Source: Epiperipatus broadwayi (taxonomy: Eukaryota > Animalia > Onychophora). From it: a DNA stretch of 64,000 nt. The stretch lies in contig JAQFVV010000006.1 of NCBI GenBank assembly GCA_028023455.1, forward strand, positions 2,480,001 through 2,544,000, in the 5' to 3' direction. Made by a program: the position numbers and the translations under genes. Below are positions 1,011-55,008 of the stretch, one piece after another. The notes under the pieces are model-generated. The model saw only the letters and a program-made list of their open reading frames with translations. It made no database searches and was not told the DNA's origin. Each line of letters begins with the position of its first letter. Positions within the stretch are counted from its first letter, which is position 1.

Positions 1011-2344
1011 TAAGATAACCTAACCCTGTTATAATCCAACTTATTGAAAGCAGTAGTATAGTATAAAGCAGAAAAATGATATAAAACAGACAGCTGGAGA
1101 AAGAATAACAGCAAACTACATGTTTAATTAAAACATGTTTTTATCAGACAAATATGTATGTATGCATATGGTATGTACATATATATATATATATATAATT
1201 AAATAGTTTTTTCAGACAAAAGTAAATACTGATAATTTTATATTGTTGATGTATCACAGTGTAATTAGACAAAACATCATTTAAAAGCTAGCATAACAAA
1301 TCATGCTATCTAGCAATAGTATATACCTAAACCATCTTTAAGTTAAAATTGGAGGCCCTTAATATATTACCCTAGAATTTATAAGAGTTGTAGATTAAAA
1401 CTAATACTTTGCATTATAACACTTCTTTCTAAATATTTTCACAAGTAAACAAATTTCTCCTTTAAAAAATTGTATATAATAAAAAAAATTGTATATAATA
1501 ATTAAATTGTAATGGACTTTTTGTTGTAGGCATTGATGATTTGATGTATTTTTTATACGTTTATTAAGATTAATTTCATCTATGATGTAAACAGATAACC
1601 ACCCAATTAAAAACTTGCATTGCAAACCAAAATTATATTTTTTATTAATAGTATTTGACTGACCCTCTTTTAATAAGCTAAAGGTGGAATCAATTTTCAG
1701 TTTATTAGCCTAGATTTTAAAAGATTAATTGTTTTTCATATTGGTAGTATTTAGGTATGGACTGCTTTTATGTATTTACATTTATTTATAAATAAATCAC
1801 CAACTCTGTTCCAAATATCCAACATGTATATAAATATTACAGAGAGTAAAAAGTTTTAAAATAAAAATAAATACTAATTCACTAAGCACTTTCGTTACTG
1901 TATACCAGATTCATGGTGACTAATTTAAACTGAAGGGTTAATATTCCAGTTCATGCTCAATGGAACACTCATATTACATTAATTAATGATGTCATTAAAC
2001 TTAGCAATAAACAGCCTTTTTCAACTTTAGGCTCATTGCAAATAGCACTAATTATATGAGGAAAACATTCGTTCCCATTAGTTTTCTTATGATTAAAATA
2101 TGCTTAGATTTTATTTTAGATTTCCTATATTGATAAACATATTGCCACAATCTTATTGATATATTAGCCTTCCTTTCTGCATAATAAATAGCATTACAAC
2201 CAGACTCTAAGCAAATAATTGAATATACAAACAACTTCATATTTATCATCACCATCCACAGTATCTTTTGAATTACTTATCAACCTATTTAAACATAAAG
2301 GTTGATATATTATTTCAAAGGATAATGTAGATGGTGATGATAAA

Positions 2345-2673
2345 TATGGAGTTGTTTGTATATTCAATTATTTGCCGTGAGTCTGGTTGTAATGCTATTT
2401 ATTATGGGGCAGCAAAAGCTAATATATCAACGAGGTTGTGGCAATATGTTTTATCAATATAGGAAATCCAAAATGGAATCTCAGGTTAATTCAGTATTTT
2501 TTAATCATGAGAAAATTAATGGGGATGAATGTTTTCCTCATATGATTAGTGCTATTTGCAATGAGCCTAATGATAGGAAGAGGAAGTTGAAAGAAGCTTG
2601 GTTTATTACTAAGTCTAAAGATGTCTTTAATCAACATAATATGAGTCCCAGTGATCATGCACTGGAACATTAA
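2345..2673 (+). pseudogene. Frameshifted PLE GIY-YIG endonuclease C-terminal domain
   Basis: Combining frames and the minus-arm ORF 2052-2255 gives GVVYSIICxESGCNAIYYG..KANISTRL..Y.YQYRKSK...KRKLKEAWFI...VFNQ*. This matches the PLE GIY-YIG pattern VY.I.C..C...YxG, R, E, N. Confidence 0.8.
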
Positions 2674-2691
2674 CAATTCAGTTTAAATTAG

Positions 2692-2731
2692 TCATCATGA
2701 ATTTATTATCAGTACTGAAAGTGCTTGGTGA
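2692..2731 (+). ncRNA. Decayed variant hammerhead (A3/U8 core) in PLE pLTR; mirror copy at 1879-1919 (-)
   Basis: TCATC ATGAAT..GTACT GAAA GTGCT T GGTGA. Helix I is TCAYC/RGTGA and helix III is AGTGCT (AGCGCT after CpG decay). Confidence 0.6.
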
Positions 2732-3414
2732 TTAATATTTATTTTTTATTTTAAAACTTTTTACTCTGCATAATGTTTATATATGTGTTTGGCTTTATTA
2801 TCATCTGCTGATTAAAAGTTATAATTGACTATTTGTTTAACCTGCTTTGAAAACAGGTTATATTTGCATGTTTAGTCAGGTTTATTTAAACTTCTTTGAA
2901 TTAAAAATCTCACTCTGTTTAGTTAAATTGTAATCTTTAGGTATATAAACACATTGGTCCATAGATAAGGATAGATATCCATATTTATTGTAAAAAGGAG
3001 GTTGCCTTGACAACAGATTGAGATTCTTATTAGTATTGTTTAGGTGTAGACTGCTTTAATATATTTACATTTATATATATGTAATTGATATGGAAGTTAT
3101 GATCATTTCTTATATATATATATGTGTGTGTGTTAAGGGTGTTAGTGTAAGTTGTTTACAAAAACAAGTTTTGCAATCTATGTAATAATAGAAAATTATA
3201 GCTAGTCAATTTTCTAGATCATTATTTGATGTAATTTTCCAATTTGAGTTATTCCTTTAACAAAATTTAACATTTAAATTTTGAAGGGCTTTAATTACTT
3301 TAGATGACAATCTTTTTTTATGAAAAGGCCCTAAGAAGAACTTCATTCATCTTTGAAGATTTTATTGGATGTAATTTTATCTATTTAAAAGTTAGTAGAA
3401 TGAAATATTTCTAG

Positions 3415-4320: not shown

Positions 4321-4440
4321 AAATGAATATCTAACTATTTTAGCTAGAACTGAAATCTCATGTGCAATGTGGATAGACATAGCAAGCAATGGTTACTCTA
4401 TCAGAATCCTGTAAATACCTATATATATATATATATATAT

Positions 4441-5565
4441 ATGTTCAAAAGATGGCGCTATACCAAAACCGCCGAACAAGTGTAAGATTTGTTTTACATA
4501 AACGAAAAAAGAGTCAGAAATTAACTACCTCTTTCATTTGCTCACCTCCAGATCAGCTGATTTCAAGCTGGTTTGCTCTCCTCAGTGGGGGATAGAGTAT
4601 AGAAACTAGATCTAAAACACTGACTCTCAAGTGTTTATGCAAAACGTTTCTATCAGATTGCAGCATGAATTTTCAGACCGGTAAAGTCTTCAAACTCAGC
4701 CTAGCAAGCCAGATATTTATATGGGTCTGATCTCAGTTCAGAATCACCATATAATCAAAGTCTCTGCAATATATATCATTGCAAGAAAACTTTAAAGGTA
4801 CATTTATGAAAAACAAAAACAAGTTAATCACGTAACCTGCTATCACTTGTTATTTATGTTCAAAAGATGGCGCTATACCAAAACCGCCGAACAAGTGTAA
4901 GATTTGTTTTACATAAACGAAAAAAGAGTCAGAAATTAACTACCTCTTTCATTTGCTCACCCCCAGATCAGCTGATTTCAAGCTGGTTTGCTCTCCTCAA
5001 ATGAAAGAAGTAGTTAATTTCTGACTCTTTTTTCGTTTATGTAAAACAAATCTTACACTTGTTCGGCGGTTTTGGTATAGCGCCATCTTTTGAACATAAA
5101 TAACAAGTGATAGCAGGTTACGTGATTAACTTGTTTTTTGTTTTTCATAAATGTACCTTTAAAGTTTTCTTGCAACGATATATATTGCAGAGACTTTGAT
5201 TATATGGTGATTCTGAACTGAGATCAGACCCATATAAATATCTAGCTTGCTAGGCTGAGTTTGAAGACTTTACCGGTCTGAAAAATTCACGCTTGCAATC
5301 TGATAGAAACGTTTTGCATAAACACTTGAGAGTCAGTGTTTTAGATCTAGTTTCTATACTCTATCCCCCACTGAGGAGAGCAAACCAGCTTGAAATCAGC
5401 TGATCTGGGAGTGAGCAAATGAAAGAGGTAGTTAATTTCTGACTCTTTTTTCGTTTATGTAAAACAAATCTTACACTTGTTCGGCGGTTTTGGTATAGCG
5501 CCATCTTTTGAATATAAATAACAAGTGATAGCAGGTTACGTAATTAACTTGTTTTTGTTTTTCAT
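4441..5565. mobile_element. Young non-coding PLE-type pLTR element: ~416-bp unit, partial tandem copy, then inverted copies (1.1-kb palindrome), flanked by (TA)n
   Basis: 4441-4856 is repeated from 4857 to 4999. 5000-5565 is its near-identical reverse complement. It carries three HHR copies. Confidence 0.9.
5367..5409 (+). ncRNA. Minimal type-I hammerhead ribozyme, canonical core; copies at 4546-4590 (-) and 5'-truncated 4961-4999 (-)
   Basis: CCCA CTGAGGA GAGC aaacca GCTT GAAA TCAGCTGAT C TGGG. Helix I CCCA/TGGG, helix II GAGC/GCTT, palindromic helix III ATCAGCTGAT, AUC cleavage triplet. Confidence 0.9.
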
Positions 5566-7254
5566 ATATATATATATCAAAAACCAGTCAACACTTAGAC
5601 AATCCCAACATCAATAACAATCAACAATTTCTAACCGTTAACAAGACAATCTTTTTTTAACGATAAGGATGGAATATATATATATTAAAGTAGATAATAA
5701 ACATGATGTGCATTAACCAAAGAACCACGGGCACAAATATTCCTTCAAGTTTTTAATGTGGAGTTATATATGAGATATAACTAAACAAATTATTGCCAAT
5801 ATTTTTATTTTTTTTATTATATATTGTTATTTCACACACATTAATAACATTGCTAAATTAAGGTCTACCATTAACTATCATTCGCATAACTCTAGTAAAT
5901 GTTTGTTTTAATAAAGTAGTTGTACATACATACTAGTAATGCATGTTGTTACTGCCATATATTGCACCCCTGTTCTTTTGCATACAACACTGACATTTAT
6001 ATTTTTGTAATCATTCTTAGTACTTCAATAAAATTTTGTTTGATTTTCTATTATCCTTTTTTTTTAGTGTAATTGAGCAAACTATCAAAACCTCACCACC
6101 AGGAAATTGGCAAGTCCTGAGAGGGTGTTCTGCCTGTTCTTGAACTATTTCTTTATGTAGATCTATTGGAAAGATGTATGCTGTGCATTGGGCCATTTTT
6201 GTGTTGTTTTAACTTAACCATTACTTATCTATAATCTTTACACTTTAGGTTATGGGATTAGAATGGGTTACTTTTATATACACATCTTTCAATGCCCATA
6301 GGGTACTTCTGGAAACAATTGTGTTTATTGATGTTGATTTTTACTTATTAGTTCATAAATGGTGGCAAGTAAGAGCAAACTTCCGTTGATGATGATCAGG
6401 TCCCCAGTATTGTATTTCCTAATCGTTCTACTTCCCTTCAGTCAGAAAATATAACGAATATATATATATAATTTATGGCTGATTACTTTTATACGGTTTA
6501 ACGATTTGTTTGGAGATCTTTAAAATGTAATGTCAGTTTTTCTAACGATAATGTTAACTATAGTTTTTGATATCTGATAAAATGTCAATTGTTGAATTGT
6601 CTTGAAAAGGTAAAAAAATAAAAATAAACAAACATTTTCTAGCATTTCACATTGACTTTTTTATGTTTATTTTCCAAGAATATTAAAATTCAAATGCGAG
6701 GTATTATTATGCAAATCTAAGAATATTTTCTTTTTTAGCTTTTGAAAAACATCGCCGAAGATTATTAAAAGTAAAATGTTAATTTTTCAACATTAGCAAT
6801 TTGATTTAGAAGCGGAAAAAATAATGATAATAAAAACATAGTTTTAGAATTTTATATTCATTTTAAAAGTTCAACACACTTGTATGTGTGCAGCATTTGA
6901 ATACTGTTAATTTATCGTACAAATTGTTCACTCCATTATTTTTTGCATATTTGTAAAGTCCTATAAATATCTTAATATTTTATTGTGAATTTGAGGATAG
7001 ATTTTGCAGTAAAGGTAGTTGTTTTACTTTATGGAAAATACAAGAAAACTAAGGAAATACAATTTTGATCACTCTTTTTGGTAAGATGGATGAGGATAGA
7101 CTAAATGTTCAAGTTAAAAGATAGCATTATAAAGTAGATAGAATTACCGATCGGCATATTCTAAATAGTGATGCCAAAATATCTGATGTACCAATGAATA
7201 CTGCTTCAGTTATACGCTATTCAAAAACAAAGTAAACAAACAAAAAATATAATA

Positions 7255-7870: not shown

Positions 7871-8079
7871 ATTAACATTTTATGATTCTATATCACCAAA
7901 CTATATTTCAGTGGCCATTTTTGATGTTTTTAACACTCTTGGTAACTAATACGATTTTGTTTAATTAACTTTATCTTTTTCATGTGAAGTATGTTGAAAG
8001 GCTTAGATATTTTTTTCTTTGTTTTTTTTTAAAATTTTTTTTTTCAAAAGTTTTATTTGATGAAATGCTTTATAAGTAT

Positions 8080-8810
8080 AATTTAAAAATATAAAATATA
8101 AAATGTGCTAAAATGCACCAACACACAAAGCTGAAAACAAAGAAATATTAATACAGATTGATACAAACTAAATATCTCTATCTAACTATGTGGTTAAGCA
8201 CTTTCGAGGGCCAGAGTCCTCATATTCATAGCTTTCACACACCCCCAACTCCAAAAAAACTAATCAATAATACCAAAGACAGCTTACCACCTTCGCTAAT
8301 ACCTCAGGTAGTTTATAATATTGACTGCCCTGAAACACATTGTATGGCATCGTATTATGGTTAAACCAGGAACTTTTTTCCACTAAGCTATCTCAACACA
8401 CATACTCCTATAATAAAGCACTAACAGACACTTCTTGTAATTCAGTTTTTGCACAGCATTGCAGCTTAGCTGGTCATGATTGCCTACCTAAAGACCTAGT
8501 GGTTATTTGCAGAGCAGTCCAATCTCAAGAGATAGATCAAAGAAGCTTACTTTATCACTAAAGATAACTTAATAAACAGAAAATACTTTTGTTATAAGAT
8601 CTCCAGGAAATGGAATATGTAACTATCTCATTTGCATCATTCTTAATCAATTTATTTATTCACAAGATAGCTATGAATATGAGGACCCTGGCCTTCGAAA
8701 GTGCTTAGCCACATACTTAGATACAGATATTTAATTTTTATCAATTTGTATTAATATTTCTTTATCTTCAGCTTTGTGTGTTAGTGCGTCTTAGTGCATT
8801 TTATATTTTA
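8080..8810 (+). mobile_element. 5'-truncated PLE: inverted pLTR (8080-8235), GIY-YIG remnant (8240-8600), pLTR (8665-8810)
   Basis: ORFs 8158-8364 and 8340-8561 give QVVYNIDCPETHCMASYYG*TR...LSQHTYSY...VFAQHC. The two flanks are inverted repeats of each other. Confidence 0.85.
8670..8709 (+). ncRNA. Variant hammerhead with AUGAAUA core (A3-U8); mirror copy 8192-8233 (-)
   Basis: GCT ATGAATA T GAGG accctggc CTTC GAAA GTGCT T AGC. The mirror copy has helix II GAGG/CCTC. Confidence 0.75.
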
Positions 8811-9000
8811 CACTTTGAAATAATTAGCCACAAAGTCTAAACTCTTTGCTTATTTAAGTATAATTTAAGAGAATTTATACTTTCCTAATGAATTTAAAGT
8901 TATTGATTTGTAGTGAAAGAAATATTCATAATTAGAAGGAGGCCATATGTTCAAAAAGAATGATCTATCAATGAAATCATGAAAAGTATATTAGTTTTAT

Positions 9001-13724: not shown

Positions 13725-14720
13725 ATCATCATCATCACCCATTATCAGTCTACTGCAAGATGAAGGTTTTCCATCTTCTCTGATCTTTAGCTTCTCTTCT
13801 CCACAGCACCCCTGCACACTTTCTTATTTCATCCATCCATCTCACGTGGTCTCTTTCTGGGTCTTACAATGTTTAAGATTCCAATTGTCCATCTATTATC
13901 ATCTCTTCTAGCAATATGTCCAGCCCAACCCCACTTCAGTTTTTTAATTTTTTCAATGAGATCAGTAACACCTGTTTGTTCTCTTACCCATACATTGCGT
14001 TTTTGATCTCTTCTTGTTACTCCTAACATGCATCTTTCCATACTTCTTTGAGTGGTCTGAAGTCTCTGTATTGCTCTTCTATTAAGTGTCCAAGTCTCAG
14101 ATCCATAAGTAAGAACTGGTAAAACACATTTATTAAAAACCTTTCTTTTCAAACACATAGGCAGATTTCCTTTTAGTATCAAGTTATTTCTACCGAAAGC
14201 ACTCCAACCAAGTTTAATTCTATGATTAATTTCATCCATTATGTTTCCATTTGCATTAATAATCTGACCAAGGTATTTGTTACTGTTAACTTCTTCTAAT
14301 TCATCATAATCCATCTTTATGTTCACATTTTGAGCAAATTGATTAAACATTACTTTAGTCTTTTTAACATTTATCTTTAGTCCTACTTTTCTACTTTCAT
14401 CTGACATTTCTTGCAACTCTGAAGCATTATTTGGGAAAACAACTACATCATCTGCAAAATCTAAATGACTTATTTTAAATAATCTCCATTTACTTTCACT
14501 CCTTTAGTTTCTCATTTTAATCCACAAAATACTTCTTGCAGCACTGCTGTAAAAAGTTTTGAAGATATGGAGTCACCTTGTCTTACACCCTTCTCAATGT
14601 TGACTTTCCTAGTATCATTATGTAATCTAATTGTTGCTGTTGCATTTTTATAAATATTCTTTAAAATATGACAATATCCTGGATCTATACCTTGATGATC
14701 CAATGCTTTATGGAGCACTT
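13725..14720 (-). mobile_element. RTE-clade LINE 3' fragment (RT C-terminal half) with (GAT)n tail
   Basis: ORFs 14512-14718 (KGVRQGDSISSKLFTAVLQ) and 13829-14416 (GLKINVKKTKVM, YLGQII, CVLPVLTYGSETW, KWGWAGHIARR) are typical RTE RT. Tail catcatcatcatc at ~13727. Confidence 0.95.
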
Positions 14721-20694: not shown

Positions 20695-21200
20695 ATGTGA
20701 AATAATTCTAAACTAAAATAAAAAGCATGCTAATAGCTCTAACAACCTTTATCAATAAATGTGGCAAGAGAAAGCATTTTAAAATCTCTATCTAGAAAGT
20801 ATCCACTTACCGGTTTCATACAATTGGCTTTCCTCAGTGAGGCACTGAATATTTCAGACACTAGATCTAAAATACCAACTCAAAGCCAGCACTTATGTGA
20901 TAGTTAACTTTTAAATAGAAAATATGAAAGTTTCAGACACCTATATGTCTTCAAATCTAGCTATCTAACTTAAATAGTAATATGGGGTTGAGAAATCTTC
21001 AGCCATACCATTAATAGCCTTAGCAGTATATATATATATATATATATGGTACTGTCTGGAATATCTTAGCACCTCATTGAGGAAAGCTAATAGCTTGAAA
21101 CCGGTCTGAGAATGGGGATAATTTCTAGATAGAGATTTTAAATGCTTTCTCTTGCAGCATTTATCAATAAAGCTTCTTAGAGCTATTAGTATGCTCTTTG
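20695..21200. mobile_element. Older fold-back pLTR element related to 4441-5565; HHRs at 21073-21110 (+) and ~20803-20843 (-)
   Basis: CTCA (C/T)TGAGGA AAGC taata GCTT GAAA CCGGT C TGAG, with palindromic helix III ACCGGT and a GUC triplet. Shares actagatctaaaa and tttcagac..gtcttcaaa with 4600-4700. Confidence 0.8.
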
Positions 21201-36023: not shown

Positions 36024-36190
36024 GAAAATGGTGATCTGGATCAACTGATGAGTGTGGGTTCTGCATGAAATACATATATTGATCATCGATCTTTTTCACT
36101 TGTATGTGGTCATGTGTATCAATTATATAAAATGCATTGGATAGCTGTGGGGAGTTTGAAAGTCTGAGTTCAAGTCCTTATAATTTATCA
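35800..36190 (+). mobile_element. Family-A element; HHR at 36039-36084
   Basis: GATCAA CTGATGA GTGTGG gtt CTGCAT GAAA TACATAT A TTGATC. B-box-like gagttcaagtcc lies downstream. Confidence 0.75.
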
Positions 36191-38094: not shown

Positions 38095-38355
38095 TTGCAT
38101 TGCCAAACCTAATATCATTTATGTTCTTTATTATTTTTTGTAATGCTTTTTTACAACCTACTATTGACAGTTTTGATTGTGCTAGCAATCTTCTTCAAAA
38201 CTTTTACTTATATTTCCAATCTTGAATTTAGCAGTTAAGATTTGAAATATAAGTAAAAGTTCTGAAGAAGATTGTTGGAGCAATTGAAACTGTCAATAGT
38301 GGGTTGTAGAAAAGCATTGTAAAAGTAATAAAGAACATAAATGATATTAATATTG
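38095..38355. mobile_element. Fold-back element with two HHRs (38259-38297 +, 38163-38201 -)
   Basis: GTT CTGAAGA A GATTG ttggag CAATT GAAA CTGT C AAT (GUC triplet). The mirror copy has CAATC AAAA, so the ancestor was CAATCGAAA. Confidence 0.8.
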
Positions 38356-40330: not shown

Positions 40331-41036
40331 TAATTTGATACTTGATGTATTAGTCTAGCGGTAAGATTTCACGTACATATTACTTCGGCAATATTTATTT
40401 TGAAAAATAAGGACCTATAACTATATTTACTGGAAATAATACAAACATTTACTGCCATGCATTTACATTTTTGTAAGAAATTATCTTCCACCATCTAAAC
40501 TTAAAAAGATTTTTAATTTTGGAAAATGACTACCTACAACTTTATTTAGTGGAAATAAAACAAACGGATTTATGTTTTTTTGCGAGTAATGATCTTCCAA
40601 TAAGTAAACTTTTAATAATCTAAATTTCTTACAAGTGGTAGCCAAGCCAAAGAAAAATAATATACATACATTTAACCGTGCAATTCTGTTCATTCACAAA
40701 ATGTTGTTTCTTAGCGTCACTGATGTGGACTGAACTTTCTTATCTCGAACCATGTTCTGTTACAAATGGCTACTCTCTTTCGACAATCCTGAACAAAACA
40801 CTACCATTGTTTGACCACAAAATTAGCAGCAAACCCAACATTTTGACTAATCACTTTCTCCTATTGGAATATTATCTAATATTTACTTAACAAAATTAAT
40901 TCATTTTTTTAGAAGATTGTAATATGTTTAATTCGGTCTATTATATGTACATTTGTTTCTGCTGGCAACAATAAATTGTATAGACTTTTTAATTCCAGAC
41001 ATTTTTTAAAAAACATTTGTAACCAATATATATTTA

Positions 41037-43853
41037 TAGAAGTTTGTAACCTGCTTTTCTGCACTAATTGTAATTATTTAGTAAATGTTGAAATATTTAA
41101 CAGCCAAACAGATTTGTTTTATAATAAAGAAATTTATTTTGAAACTAAGTGCTTTCAATGCTGAATAGTATCTTAATGATAGCATTACACAATTAAAGAG
41201 AGTTGAGATCTCATATTAAAGTTATTTTGTGTATTATAACATGAATTAGCATAAAGTTGAATTTTTAGGCCAAAATTTATATTCTAGGGATAAAAATGCC
41301 AGCTACAAATGCTATTTTTTAGAAAGAGGGGTGCTAGTGAATTTTTTGTTTATGGCATGCATATCTTTAGCTATTGACCACACCTTTGTCACCTTTCTCT
41401 TTCTGTCAACCCTAGATAGATCAAAATTGTGGCCTGGTTGCAATTTGCAAATTCTGATTCACTGCTTTTCTTGGCCTGGTTGTATAGATAATTGTGGTAG
41501 GCAAGTCTTGGGGATAAGTTAGCTCTCGTTTCTCCATAGTAAGCCTTTAAGCAATTCGACTCTTTGCAATTAATTTTGTACACAATTTGGTGTAAAACCT
41601 CTAGTTATTTTTTAAATTATTTAATAATTTATTTAAAGATAGTGAGCAAAAACTAATATTGTATTTATCAGTACAAATATTTTTTAATTTTCACACAACT
41701 TTAGAAACTTAAAAGACACTAAACCATTTTTTGTCTTCAGATTGGATGTTTACAAGGTTCAAGATTTTGTCGTAAATAGTTAGCGATTATTGAATTCACT
41801 TTTTTAGAATTGTACTCTGTATTAATTAGCTCTTTATTATATACTTCTATTTTTTTTCTTCAATCTGTTTTGAATTTACACAGCTTCCAGTTTCTATTGA
41901 GAAAACCTTTCTGTCTCATATATTTATTGGGAGAAGGGGGTAATAGATTACAATGTATAATTGCCCTTACATTTAAGGGTTTTAAAACTATCCTATAATT
42001 CAAAACATTATTATGTCTAAGGATATCAAGTCTAAAAGTTTTATATTACGATTATGCTTGTCTTACTTCTTAATAATCCAAATTAAAGAAGTCATAAATG
42101 CTAACTCAAGATGAATTTTAGTAATAGTTTCTTCATCTGTATATATTAATATTATTGTCCATGTATCTGGGGTATAAAAATGTTTAGGCAGACACTCAAA
42201 TTTTGGAATAATTTGATTTTTAAATTTGGTCAACTCCACCAAAAGGGAGTCCCATTAGCCAACCATGATTCATTTTATAGGTTTTATGCACATATCTTGT
42301 TACTAATCTAATTTAGTGTATCTATAACAAAATCTTTTTTTCTGAATGTTATATTTGATTTGCTACAGTATTTCCTCTACAACATTAATTAATTCAGTAT
42401 GAGGAACAGACCCATACAATTCTTTGATATTCAGAGGCAATTTTGTGGCCATTATCTATTTTAAGATTTCGATTTTTTCAACAAACTGATAAGTATACAG
42501 CCAAAATCCAGGTAATCTTTAAGCCAGTATATAATAAGTTTATCTATGTTGTAAAAACAAGAGCTACCAAACTCACGTAGAAGTCAAAGTGGAATTTTTT
42601 CCTTGTGGAGCTTTATAATTAGCAAAGATTCAGGGATCAATGACAGCAGATGGATGTATTTTATAATATTCAGAGTTTGACGGTGAAGGTTTTCTTCAAA
42701 TTAAAGCAATAAATTTATCTTTATCTAGCCTTTAAATTGTAATCTTTTACTTCAATAAAACACAAACCACTAATTTGCTGGCTAATTTTTACATCGTACT
42801 CCTGCCTTTTTAATAACAGACCCTATTGTCCCTATCTTCTTTCAAACAAACCAGGTTTTTAATCATTAATAAAATTTCTAACACAATTAATATTGAGTCC
42901 AATTTTAGGGATAAATCGTAAAATATTAGCAGTATTTTCTATGATTCTTTCTTTTTCCGGGTTGATTTCATACTTAGACTCAAAGTCAGCAACTATCCCC
43001 ATTTCAGGGTGGTGCCATTTATCTTGCAAATGTCTAAATCCACAGTTTAAAACGTTCTCTGCTGTCTCCAGAAATTCAACATTCGAAAGGTTGATCCAGC
43101 TTTTATCACTAGCGGGATTTAGAGTCATGTGGTTTTGTTGTCCAGCTAAAAAAAAATTATTTTTTTTAAATATTTTCTTGTTAAACTGATAGCGATGGAG
43201 CTGAACTTTATGTCAATAATTTTGGGAGTTGTATATTCCAGAACCATGTCGGGTCTTCTTACTTTATCAGCTTTCAATGTGCTGGAAATGCTTTTTATTA
43301 TAGAACTTAAGAAAACATCTTTAAGTTCTTCTGATAACCCTTTCTCGCTGGTAAATGAATCTGTTAATTTCAATGTGATAGCATTCTGGTAAATTTTTTA
43401 CTGGAGACATTTTTTAGAAAACGCAAGACATTCTTGCCTTTTTCATGATCTTTATGCAAATTTTCAGCAGAGCATGATAATGGCCATTTTGTACCATAAA
43501 TAAAACAGAAAATATGTAATTCTTTAGAAGTTTGTAACCTGCTTTTCTGCACTAATTGTAATTATTTATTAAATGTTGAAACATTTAATAGCAGAACAGG
43601 TTTGTTTTATAATAAAGAAAGTTATTTTAAAGCTAAGTGCTTTCAATACTGAATAGTATCATAATATAGCATTATACAATTAAAGACAATTGAGAATCCA
43701 TATTAAAGTTATTTTGCATATTATAGTATGAATTAGCATAAAGTTGAATTTTTAGGAGAAAATTTACATTCTAATGATAGGAATGGCAGCTACAAATGCC
43801 ATTTTTTAGAAAGAGGGGTGCTAGTGTCTTTTTTGTTTATGGCATGCATATCT
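41037..43853 (-). mobile_element. Near-full-length decayed Penelope-like element flanked by ~330-bp direct pseudo-LTRs (41037-41366, 43525-43853)
   Basis: Minus-strand order: N-terminal motif SWINLSNVEF...VLNCGF (42859-43128), RT remnants (KLHKEKIPL, LYGSVP, GWLMGLP, RYMDN at 42154-42168), then GIY-YIG VYKINCKESNCLKAYYGETRANL (41389-41583). Each pLTR holds an HHR-like motif. Confidence 0.85.
43630..43673 (-). ncRNA. Decayed variant hammerhead (A3/U8 core) in PLE pLTR; second copy 41143-41186 (-)
   Basis: GCT AT-ATTA T GATACT attc AGTATT GAAA GCACT T AGC. The other copy reads ATCATTA A. Confidence 0.55.
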
Positions 43854-44694
43854 GTTGTTAAATGTTTCAACATGTACTAAATAACCAATATATATATATA
43901 TGATTATTTTTATCATCTAATATTAACTGTTAAGCATGCTTAGAAAAAGTAATATTGGATGATGGAAATAGTCTAAGGATAGAATTACAACTTAAGTACT
44001 ATCATCACAAATTTTCAAACAGATAGTATATATATAATGAAATCTGATCATATATCAGCTCTAAATACCAAGTTTTAAGTATTTATTGTTTAGGGACCAA
44101 ATGCATGAAAATATTTATGGAGCATGCAAATTTTACCCAACAATGGATATGTATGATGATTGGAATTATGCAAACAGATTTCATAATATATTTATAGATA
44201 TATTTATCTGATTATTATATATGTGCATGTGTGCATGAAACAGGTATTAAATAGTCTACTGTAAAGTAAGGCCTTTTGAGAAAACTTTTCAAGAAATTAG
44301 AGAGAAGATGCTTTTAGCAATCTGGCTTTTTAGCAGTTTATAATGATACTTTTAGTCTAATAATTAACCAGGTTTTAATTAACAAAAGATAATTAGTAGA
44401 TTATCTATGGGCCAGCTACATGAAAGAAGATATTCAAAATCAGAGAAATTTTCCATAACTTATGTTTAGCATCATATAAAGTTCATTATAAATGGGGGGG
44501 TTTGCTTGCAAATAAAAAGTTAAACATTTTAAATAACCCATAATGGTTTGACAGATTTTTCTGTGACATTTTGAAATTAATTGTGAGGTTAAAGTCATTG
44601 CAGCCTGGGCTATTCAGCTATTCCCTAACTAAGAGCAACTAGATATCTATATATTGACTGATATGATTGGGTTGTGCTAATCTGTCATAAGGCT

Positions 44695-48234: not shown

Positions 48235-49040
48235 GTGACCAGGTGGAGAATGCACTTCAAAGATAATATGTAATGTAAATTTCACTGCAGAAATATTGTT
48301 GATTAAGTGGATAATCTCTAATCTAGTGAATGACTACTAAAACTTATTAATATACTTTCATCAAATTGTTTGTGTCAAAGTTGTGATGGCAGTAAGTTTG
48401 ACACTTATCAGTGAAAGAGTAGTAATTGACTGCCTATATATACTGAACAATGATAAAGATATGTATGGCAGATTGTGATCTGAACCAACTGATACTGCTG
48501 TTTGAGCATAAAATATGCATTTTGGGGAGTCATACTTTTTTCACATATCTTTGGTCATACATTTATGATTACATCTCCTTCAAAAGATGTTAAAAAGCGG
48601 GTAGAAAACTGTTCCTATTTTATGTGAGAATAGTGAAGTGAAAATTACACTACAGAAATGTTATTCATTAAGTGGATAATCTCTAGTCTAATGAATGACT
48701 AATAAAAGTTATTAATATACTGCCATCAAGTCGTTTGGGTCAAAGTTGTGAGGGCAGAGAGTTTGACACTTGTCAATTAAACTGTAATAATTCCCTATAT
48801 ATATTAAACAATGACAAAGACGTGTAAGAGATTGTGATCTGGGTCAATTGATGAGTGCTGGTCAACATGAAATGTGCATCTTGTAAATCATGCGTCTTGT
48901 TCTTTGGTCATATGTTTCTGTTTACACCACAAGGTGTTAAAAGCAAATAGAAAATATTCCCTACTTTGCTTGAGAGTGATGTAATGAAAATTATACTACA
49001 GAAATATTCAGTATTGGATAATATCTTGTCCAATGAATGA
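48235..49040 (+). mobile_element. Retrozyme-like ~359-bp tandem unit (~2.2 copies); decayed HHRs at ~48485-48527 and ~48844-48885
   Basis: Direct repeat with period 359, homologous to 7255-7870. CAA TTGATGA GTGCTG gtcaACAT GAAA TGTGCAT C TTG. Confidence 0.75.
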
Positions 49041-54639: not shown

Positions 54640-54866
54640 TTTATTTAAACTTTCCAAATACATCAATACATCGACTTGTTAGTAATAACACACAAATAGA
54701 CAATACAGGTTAGTGATTACACAACGTTTCGAATAGTATTATTCTCCACTCTTCTTCAGGTGTTGCTGGCTTATATGCACAGTGACAATATTCGCTTAGA
54801 AGTTGAACTCGCACCTTTAGATTTTTGAATACTGAATTTAAGGCAAACGCTCTACCAACTGAGCTA
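54640..54866 (-). mobile_element. Family-E element: tRNA-derived Pol III head, hammerhead, PLE-like tail
   Basis: Minus strand TAGCTCAGTTGGTAGAGCG (A box) ... TCTAAAGGTGCGAGTTCAA (B box; T-arm side is tRNA-Phe-like), then the HHR, then a tail ending aagtttaaataaag. Confidence 0.8.
54719..54763 (-). ncRNA. Intact-looking minimal type-I hammerhead ribozyme
   Basis: ACAC CTGAAGA A GAGTGG agaataata CTATTC GAAA CGT T GTGT. Helix I is 4 bp, helix II 6 bp, helix III the palindrome ACGT, GUU triplet, one extra A after A9. Confidence 0.9.
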
Positions 54867-54913
54867 TTCAACTATATCTCTATTTATTTAAATAAAATGG
54901 ATAATGGCATCAA

Positions 54914-55008
54914 GCGATGGTGGCCTAGCGGTTAGCATAGCTGCCTTCCAAGCAGCTGGCCCGGGTTCGCTTCCCGGTCAATGCATTTGACATATGAGGG
55001 AAAAAAAA
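54914..55008 (+). pseudogene. tRNA-Gly(TCC)-derived SINE / tRNA pseudogene
   Basis: GCGATGGTGGCCTAGCGGTTAGCATAGCTGCCTTCCAAGCAGCTGGCCCGGGTTCGCTTCCCGGTCAATGCA has an acceptor-stem mismatch and A58>C, and is followed by the SINE tail tttgacatatg. Confidence 0.8.

What the first reader, a model, noticed from the sequence alone, without database searches (positions are those of the whole stretch)
8670..8709. Penelope lineage whose hammerhead core carries a compensatory A3-U8 pair instead of C3-G8
Seen: after the GIY-YIG ORF of three separate PLE insertions (six arms: 1879-1919, 2692-2731, 8192-8233, 8670-8709, 41143-41186, 43630-43673) there is a motif with full type-I HHR geometry (helix I, core, helix II, GAAA, AGYRCT, U, helix I'). 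The core starts with A, not C, and has U at position 8: AUGAAUA at 8.2/8.7 kb, AUGAAU(C/U) at 1.9/2.7 kb, AU(C/-)AUUA at 41/43 kb. Helix I and II sequences differ between loci (GCT/AGC vs TCAYC/RGTGA; GAGG/CCTC vs GATACT/AGTATY), so the fold is what is conserved. Established: C3 and G8 form a Watson-Crick tertiary pair in the active hammerhead. Inference: A3-U8 is a lineage-fixed covariation that preserved activity and would be invisible to CUGAnGA searches. I cannot check whether it has been reported before.
Basis: partly seen in the sequence, partly recalled or inferred. Interest (0 to 1): 0.9.

Follow-up and report, generated by a model that had tools for sequence, protein, structure and literature searches.

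The report
Penelope hammerhead motif with A3-U8 core
The 40-nt motif behind these decayed Penelope-like retrotransposon remnants is the known minimal, dimer-type hammerhead ribozyme motif with its core C3-G8 pair replaced by A3-U8; the swap is the majority state of a high-copy family, extends a published kind of core covariation (U3-A8), and its cleavage is untested.

Summary
Only the pair at 8.2/8.7 kb keeps a complete hammerhead layout. The 41/43 kb pair has lost G5. The 1.9/2.7 kb pair lacks A9 and has a damaged helix II.

The 8.2/8.7 kb locus is a textbook Penelope-like insertion. It spans 8086-8855, has a 13-bp target duplication and head-to-head arms, and carries a 39-nt tail on one arm only.

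About 100 contigs per DNA run cross the motif when public runs of this organism are laid on it. The well-supported differences there only improve the fold or reflect CpG decay: helix I becomes GGCU/AGCC, helix II becomes GAGG/CCUC, and G12 decays in a third of copies. No well-supported change falls on A3 or U8, so the swap is family-wide and not decay of this copy.

The architecture matches published Penelope minimal hammerheads and canonical-core copies in this same window. Rfam does not detect the motif.

Natural U3-A8 covariation was published in 2011 and 2014. I found no report of natural A3-U8. Activity is untested.

This scan has already followed up the same variant twice elsewhere in this genome, with the same conclusion.

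The parts
8669..8710 (+). Minimal hammerhead motif, A3-U8 core. Layout: helix I (A)GCU/AGC(C), core AUGAAUA, extra U, helix II GAGGAC/GCCUUC, GAAA, loop GUGC, U16.1, U17. The predicted cleavage site lies between 8706 and 8707.
   Evidence: family majority letters (8669 A>G, 8694 T>C, 8697 G>A in 34%)
8192..8233 (-). Mirror copy of the same motif in the inverted arm. Helix II is intact (GAGG/CCUC) and helix I has one mismatch.
8086..8855 (.). One Penelope-type insertion. The short inverted arm (8086-8236, - strand) carries only the element's 3' end. The 5'-truncated copy (8237-8855, + strand) carries the endonuclease remnant, the motif and the tail.
   Evidence: inverted repeat 8078-8236 / 8666-8824 at 87%; flanks read; paralogue depth drops at 8858
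8073..8085 (.). Left copy of the 13-bp target-site duplication AAGTATAATTTAA
8856..8868 (.). Right copy of the 13-bp target-site duplication
8817..8855 (+). 39-nt tail present on the + arm only, the published Penelope-like insertion signature
   Evidence: PMC8557442 and PMC11167929
8283..8561 (+). Decayed GIY-YIG endonuclease remnant, with a frameshift and a stop near 8362
   Evidence: paralogue loose ends read as GETRASL
2690..2733 (+). Second locus, + arm: 7-bp helix I, core AUGAAUU (A9 missing), weak helix II
1877..1921 (-). Second locus, mirror arm: core AUGAAUC
2052..2673 (.). Head-to-head GIY-YIG remnants of the second locus (ORFs 2052-2255 on - and 2356-2673 on +)
41143..41184 (-). Third locus, downstream repeat: core AUCAUUA (G5 lost), helix II GAUACU/AGCAUU
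43631..43671 (-). Third locus, upstream repeat: core AU-AUUA, helix II GAUACU/AGUAUU (6 of 6 pairs)
41026..43860 (-). Old, internally deleted Penelope-like element with direct terminal repeats (41026-41373 and 43514-43860, 88-89% identical) and a GIY-YIG remnant at 41389-41583

Best explanation
The motif is the minimal, dimer-type, type-I hammerhead of Penelope-like retrotransposons. It sits in the 3' region or terminal repeat, downstream of the GIY-YIG endonuclease. In the source copies of at least one high-copy family, the tertiary Watson-Crick pair C3-G8 of the catalytic core has been replaced by A3-U8. Every other defining position is kept. By inference it works, if at all, like other Penelope minimal hammerheads. 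Two motifs in a multimeric or tandem transcript would pair their quasi-palindromic AGUGCU segments into an extended helix III. Cleavage would follow U17, here between 8706 and 8707, and would probably be slow and helped by the element's protein. The six copies in this window are old, 5'-truncated, CpG-decayed insertions and are themselves dead relics.
For: Shown: the anatomy matches position by position the canonical-core minimal hammerheads in the same window (54719-54763 and 38259-38297), including the extra nucleotide after A9 and G10.1-C11.1. Only positions 3 and 8 differ. These are the features Cervera & de la Pena 2014 list for Penelope minimal hammerheads, including paired motifs on opposite strands 100-700 bp apart. 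Shown: the host is a Penelope-like element, with a 13-bp target duplication, head-to-head arms, a one-sided 39-nt tail and GIY-YIG remnants. Shown: the swap is family-wide. About 1,900-2,000 contigs per DNA run match the stretch and about 100 cross the motif. The majority differences there restore pairing (8669 A>G, 8694 T>C) or are CpG decay (8697), and none of the listed differences is at A3 or U8. Shown: helices covary between loci while A3/U8 stay fixed. Helix II is GAGGAC/GCCCUC at one locus and GAUACU/AGUAUU at another, with three double compensatory changes. Helix I is GCU/AGC at one locus and AGUCAUC/GGUGAUU at another. From the literature: natural U3-A8 covariation exists. In a Penelope-like element's hammerhead, the C3G/G8C double mutant, also purine-3/pyrimidine-8, partly restores cleavage (PMC11167929).
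Against: There is no cleavage evidence. Nothing in the laid contigs begins or ends at the predicted site. The contig ends at 8698 coincide with the G/A polymorphism at 8697 and look like assembly breaks. Published Penelope minimal hammerheads cleave poorly in vitro, and cleavage was not needed for insertion in vitro. Purine-3/pyrimidine-8 is the less favoured orientation in some contexts (Przybilski & Hammann 2007, recalled from memory, not readable here). Two of the three loci carry further core defects (no G5, or no A9), and their family majority could not be checked. The read-laying table is truncated (180 differences not shown), so minority C3 or G8 variants cannot be excluded.
Confidence: 0.7

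Rival explanations
1. The motif is a hammerhead-derived structural module that no longer cleaves. The family keeps the fold, for example for recognition by its reverse transcriptase or for RNA dimerisation. A3-U8 is tolerated because catalysis is dispensable.
For: Hammerhead cleavage was not required for target-primed insertion by a Penelope-like element in vitro, and no RNA-seq reads ended at the cut site (PMC11167929). Naiad Penelope-like elements thrive without hammerheads (PMC8557442). Minimal hammerheads have very low activity in vitro. Two loci here carry further core changes at G5 or A9.
Against: The replacement is exactly a Watson-Crick-compatible double change at the two positions that pair in the active structure. 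All other catalytic positions (U4, G5, A6, A9, G12, A13, A14, A15.1-U16.1, H17) remain the family majority. That is what selection for an active core predicts, and it is not needed for a mere scaffold.
Confidence: 0.24
2. A3 and U8 are copy-specific decay of an ordinary CUGANGA hammerhead.
For: The copies are old (arms 87% alike; CpG observed/expected 0.35) and carry other mutations.
Against: Both changes are transversions. They are shared by six arms at three diverged loci. They are the majority letters among about 100 paralogous contigs per run.
Confidence: 0.03
3. The resemblance to a hammerhead is chance similarity in AT-rich DNA.
For: Rfam finds no hammerhead here. Minimum-free-energy folds of the short motif are not distinctive.
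Against: The two-box pattern occurs 4 times against 0.01 expected, and the strict descriptor once against 0.05. The motif holds a fixed position behind GIY-YIG remnants in Penelope-type insertions, and its architecture is identical to canonical-core copies in the same window.
Confidence: 0.03

Closest known systems
U3-A8 minimal hammerheads of Cercyon Penelope-like elements in Schistosoma mansoni (Cervera & de la Pena 2014, PMC4209133)
   Same: Same host element type and same place in the terminal repeat. Same minimal architecture: short helix I, extra nucleotide after A9, G10.1-C11.1, and a tiny palindromic helix III implying dimers. The same kind of event, a natural Watson-Crick covariation of the 3-8 core pair, in a high-copy family that is often seen as paired motifs on opposite strands.
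   Different: Here the pair is A3-U8, which puts a purine at 3 and a pyrimidine at 8. That is the reverse of both C3-G8 and U3-A8. I found no report of this form in nature.
Canonical-core Penelope or retrozyme minimal hammerheads, including copies in this window (54719-54763, 38259-38297, 5365-5411)
   Same: Every architectural feature and all core positions except 3 and 8.
   Different: They have C3-G8. The 5365-5411 copy is recognised by Rfam Hammerhead_1 at 26.5 bits, below the gathering score, whereas the A3-U8 motif is not recognised at all.
Engineered 3/8 swaps: C3G/G8C in the Anolis Poseidon element (PMC11167929); all four pairs in type III hammerheads (Przybilski & Hammann 2007, cited in PMC3088659)
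   Same: A Watson-Crick pair other than C-G at positions 3-8. The double mutants keep or partly regain cleavage.
   Different: Those are laboratory mutants. Here the swap is natural and fixed in a repeat family, and A-U rather than G-C has not been tested in a Penelope-like context.
Animal non-LTR retrozymes, non-autonomous derivatives of Penelope-like elements (PMC7229834; bioRxiv 10.64898/2026.07.22.740005)
   Same: The 3' ~270 nt carrying the motif is about 8-10 times more abundant than the coding part. One contig from an RNA library implies a ~160-170-nt tandem or circular unit containing the motif.
   Different: No tandem array of this unit lies in the window. Circularity and transcription are not demonstrated.

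Membership tests
Penelope-like-element minimal hammerhead (min-HHR, Cervera & de la Pena 2014) | Lies in the 3' region or terminal repeat of a Penelope-like element, often as paired motifs on opposite strands 100-700 bp apart | tested here: met
   Target duplication, head-to-head arms and one-sided tail. GIY-YIG remnants upstream. Arms about 440 and 770 bp apart. Direct repeats at 41/43.5 kb.
Penelope-like-element minimal hammerhead (min-HHR, Cervera & de la Pena 2014) | 5' core box N3-U4-G5-A6-N7-N8-A9, with 3 and 8 able to form a Watson-Crick pair (C-G canonical; U-A is a published variant) | tested here: met
   8.2/8.7 kb arms: AUGAAUA with A3-U8, also the family majority. The literal CUGANGA string is not met. 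The 41/43 kb arms lack G5 and the 1.9/2.7 kb arms lack A9, so those four copies fail this feature as they stand.
Penelope-like-element minimal hammerhead (min-HHR, Cervera & de la Pena 2014) | One unpaired nucleotide between A9 and 10.1 | tested here: met
   U (or A in one arm) in all six arms, and A in the two canonical-core copies of the window.
Penelope-like-element minimal hammerhead (min-HHR, Cervera & de la Pena 2014) | G10.1-C11.1 closing helix II, followed by G12-A13-A14 | tested here: met
   G-C in both 8 kb arms and in 1877-1921. Elsewhere it is G-U, where C11.1 lies in a CpG with G12. GAAA is present in 6 of 6 arms. G12 is A in 34% of paralogues through CpG decay.
Penelope-like-element minimal hammerhead (min-HHR, Cervera & de la Pena 2014) | Minimal helix III: A15.1-U16.1 around a short palindromic loop, then H17 | tested here: met
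   A-GUGC-U-U or A-GCAC-U-U in all six arms. AGUGCU pairs with itself through 4 Watson-Crick and 2 G-U pairs.
Penelope-like-element minimal hammerhead (min-HHR, Cervera & de la Pena 2014) | Short helix I (about 3-5 bp) closing the motif, with helices covarying between families | tested here: met
   3 bp in the 8.7 kb copy, 4 bp (GGCU/AGCC) in the family majority, and 7 bp at 2690-2733. Compensatory differences between loci.
Hammerhead ribozyme (catalytic class) | Site-specific self-cleavage after position 17 | not testable with these tools
   Only assembled contigs were available. No ends fall at 8706/8707.
Rfam Hammerhead_1 (RF00163) and the other Rfam hammerhead models | Score at or above the curated gathering threshold | tested here: not met
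   No hammerhead match at gathering or at E<=10. The canonical-core control at 5365-5411 also stays below gathering (26.5 against 34 bits), so these models are poor judges of minimal hammerheads.

The most novel reading that the evidence does not exclude
A3-U8 hammerheads form a natural, catalytically competent purine-3/pyrimidine-8 core class. They would be fixed in several Penelope-like families and their short non-autonomous derivatives in this animal, possibly giving ~165-nt circular RNAs. Every CUGANGA-based census would miss them, so hammerhead counts in animal genomes would be systematically too low, and the 3-8 pair would be free to take either orientation in vivo.
Probability: 0.35. 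Interest if true: 0.55.

Novelty: new variant of a known kind. Interest (0 to 1): 0.4.

Why it matters
The C3-G8 pair positions the nucleotide whose 2'-OH acts as the general acid in hammerhead catalysis. Natural sequence variation is the cleanest evidence for which geometries evolution tolerates there. Only U3-A8 has been reported in nature. A high-copy family with A3-U8 would show that the reversed purine/pyrimidine orientation is tolerated too, or else that Penelope-like elements keep the fold without needing cleavage. That bears on the open question of what these ribozymes do for the element. In practice, descriptors and covariance models that hard-code CUGANGA miss this class. The step beyond published work is small, though, and the copies in this window are dead relics.

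Tried and rejected
1. Rfam at gathering and permissive thresholds found no hammerhead at the motif. A canonical-core control in the window scored 26.5 bits.

2. Protein routes to related elements in other assemblies all failed because the endonuclease remnants are too decayed. Pfam found nothing. The HMMER search of representatives returned only spurious bacterial repeat proteins. The word-indexed homologue search found no candidates for the two pieces tried. No cross-species test of the core was therefore possible.

3. A metagenome scan with an A3-U8 descriptor returned 120 stretches. All are consistent with chance, and only two have even 3-bp helices I and II.

4. Thermodynamic folding of monomers and homodimers does not discriminate for such short AT-rich motifs.

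5. MAFFT alignments put the second locus and the canonical copies out of register. I therefore counted pairs with an explicit segmentation script instead of the count of structure pairs.

6. Contig ends at 8698 in the RNA library were considered as cleavage ends and rejected. They sit at a polymorphic CpG, not at the predicted site.

7. Lunse et al. 2017, Przybilski & Hammann 2007 and Hammann et al. 2012 are not held in the library. An earlier report of A3-U8 there cannot be excluded.

Full report
**The observation**

The sequence at 8669-8710 (+) reads, in RNA terms: helix I GCU, core AUGAAUA, one extra U, helix II GAGG(AC)...(GC)CUUC, GAAA, loop GUGC, U, U, then AGC closing helix I. A mirror copy lies at 8192-8233 (-).

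The same two-box layout occurs at 1877-1921 (-) and 2690-2733 (+), and at 41143-41184 (-) and 43631-43671 (-).
- GAAAGYRCTT is found 6 times against 0.63 expected.
- ATGAAT...GAAAGYRCTT is found 4 times against 0.01 expected.

All six arms have A at position 3 and U at position 8. Completeness differs between loci:
- **8.2/8.7 kb pair:** only this pair has a complete core. The + arm passes a strict structural descriptor (1 hit against 0.05 expected in shuffles).
- **41/43 kb arms:** G5 is lost (a C in one arm, a deletion in the other).
- **1.9/2.7 kb arms:** U or C replaces A9, and only 3 of 4 helix II pairs remain in each arm.

**The host elements**

The 8 kb locus is a single insertion spanning 8086-8855, flanked by a 13-bp target-site duplication (8073-8085 and 8856-8868). 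It has two parts:
- a short inverted arm that carries only the element's 3' end;
- a longer 5'-truncated copy with a decayed GIY-YIG remnant, the motif, and a 39-nt tail (8817-8855) that the other arm lacks.

Head-to-head arms and a 30-40-bp one-sided tail are the published footprint of Penelope-like elements (PMC8557442; PMC11167929).

The endonuclease remnants are too decayed for Pfam. The pieces from the second and third loci fall among eukaryotic GIY-YIG clusters in the ESM Atlas. The three remnants match each other over the GIY-YIG N-terminal motif. The 41-43.9 kb locus has direct terminal repeats that are 88-89% identical.

**Copy-specific decay or family state?**

I laid Logan contigs of two DNA runs of this organism on 8237-8900 at 80% likeness or better.
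- About 1,900-2,000 contigs per run match the stretch, and about 100 cross the motif.
- The best-supported differences in or next to the motif are three. 8669 A>G (90-97% of depth) extends helix I to GGCU/AGCC. 8694 T>C (92-94%) restores CCUC opposite GAGG. 8697 G>A (34%) is CpG decay of C11.1-G12.
- No difference at 8673 (A3) or 8678 (U8) is among those listed, although differences with shares of 20-30% are listed at other places.

The window's A and U are therefore the family majority. This copy's own mutations are ones that damage the fold. The caveat is that the table is truncated (180 differences not shown), so minority variants remain possible. The contigs also sample only the family close enough to this copy.

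**Comparison inside the window**

The window also holds canonical-core motifs, for example at 54719-54763 (-) and 38259-38297 (+).
- Their layout is identical to the A3-U8 motifs, including the unpaired nucleotide after A9 and G10.1-C11.1. Only positions 3 and 8 differ.
- Between the A3-U8 loci the helices covary. Helix II is GAGGAC/GCCCUC at one locus and GAUACU/AGUAUU at another, with three double compensatory changes. Helix I is GCU/AGC at one and AGUCAUC/GGUGAUU at another.
- The 3' regions around the motif are otherwise poorly alignable between loci.

This is the pattern expected of a conserved RNA fold.

**The literature**

- Cervera & de la Pena 2014 defined the Penelope minimal hammerhead by a short helix I, an unpaired nucleotide between 9 and 10.1, a conserved G10.1-C11.1, and a palindromic 15.2-16.2/loop 3 implying dimers. 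They also noted paired motifs on opposite strands 100-700 bp apart.
- The same paper reported a natural U3-A8 covariation in Cercyon elements, with about 1,300 hits.
- Perreault et al. 2011 also reported natural U3-A8 and stated that covarying 3/8 variants were already known to be active in vitro.
- Frangieh et al. 2024 showed that in a Penelope-like element's hammerhead the single C3G and G8C mutants are dead and the double mutant partly recovers. They also showed that cleavage needs the protein but is not needed for insertion in vitro.
- 'A3-U8' together with 'hammerhead' occurs in no paper of the searchable library. Three relevant papers could not be read.

**Mechanism**

Shown: the motif belongs by anatomy and context to the Penelope minimal hammerheads, and A3-U8 is the state of its family.

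Inferred: A3-U8 is isosteric with C3-G8 and so could still position nucleotide 8, whose 2'-OH serves as the general acid (established knowledge). Two motifs would pair their AGUGCU segments into helix III, and cleavage would follow U17.

Not shown: any cleavage. The main rival is that the fold is kept but catalysis is dispensable.

**Standard tools**

Rfam does not see the motif at any threshold. It does see a canonical-core copy at 5365-5411 at 26.5 bits.

**Leads**

The 3' ~270 nt of the element is about 8-10 times more abundant than the coding part. A 200-nt contig from a probable RNA library joins 8723, through 27 nt, back to 8591. That implies a tandem or circular unit of about 160-170 nt carrying the motif. 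It recalls retrozymes but is unverified.

**Earlier work in this scan**

Two follow-ups elsewhere in this genome (s1-085370, s1-184205) reached the same conclusion. My tests were independent of theirs.

**Verdict**

This is a real, family-wide A3-U8 variant of a known ribozyme motif in dead copies of a known element type. It is a modest extension of published covariation, and its activity is untested.

Noticed in passing
window 4436-5572: A young non-coding foldback (arms 98-99% alike) inserted in a (TA)n run. It carries canonical-core hammerheads (CUGAGGA) at 5365-5411 (+) and 4548-4588 (-). The + copy matches Rfam Hammerhead_1 at 26.5 bits. It looks like a retrozyme-like, Penelope-style insertion.
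   Followed up: partly
window 54719-54873 (-) and 54914-54985 (+): A canonical-core minimal hammerhead (CUGAAGA plus an extra A, GAAACGUU) lies 35 nt downstream of a tRNA-like head (Rfam tRNA, 29.6 bits). This looks like a tRNA-headed SINE-like element. It sits next to a genuine tRNA-Gly(UCC) gene.
   Followed up: partly
window 36039-36084 (+), 38259-38297 (+), 21073-21110 (+), 48845-48883 (+): Further hammerhead-like motifs: two with intact C3-G8 cores and two with U3 (UUGAGGA, UUGAUGA), giving a U-G wobble at positions 3/8.
   Followed up: no
window 8591-8750, seen in run X5: A 200-nt contig of a probable RNA library (depth 25.9, the highest of that run on this stretch) joins 8723 back to 8591 through 27 nt. 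This implies a tandem or circular ~160-170-nt unit containing the A3-U8 motif. DNA depth rises about 8-fold at ~8582-8604.
   Followed up: no
window 13829-14416 (-): A 195-aa open reading frame that looks like the C-terminal part of a non-LTR retrotransposon reverse transcriptase, read by eye only. The window has 29% G+C and a CpG observed/expected ratio of 0.35.
   Followed up: no
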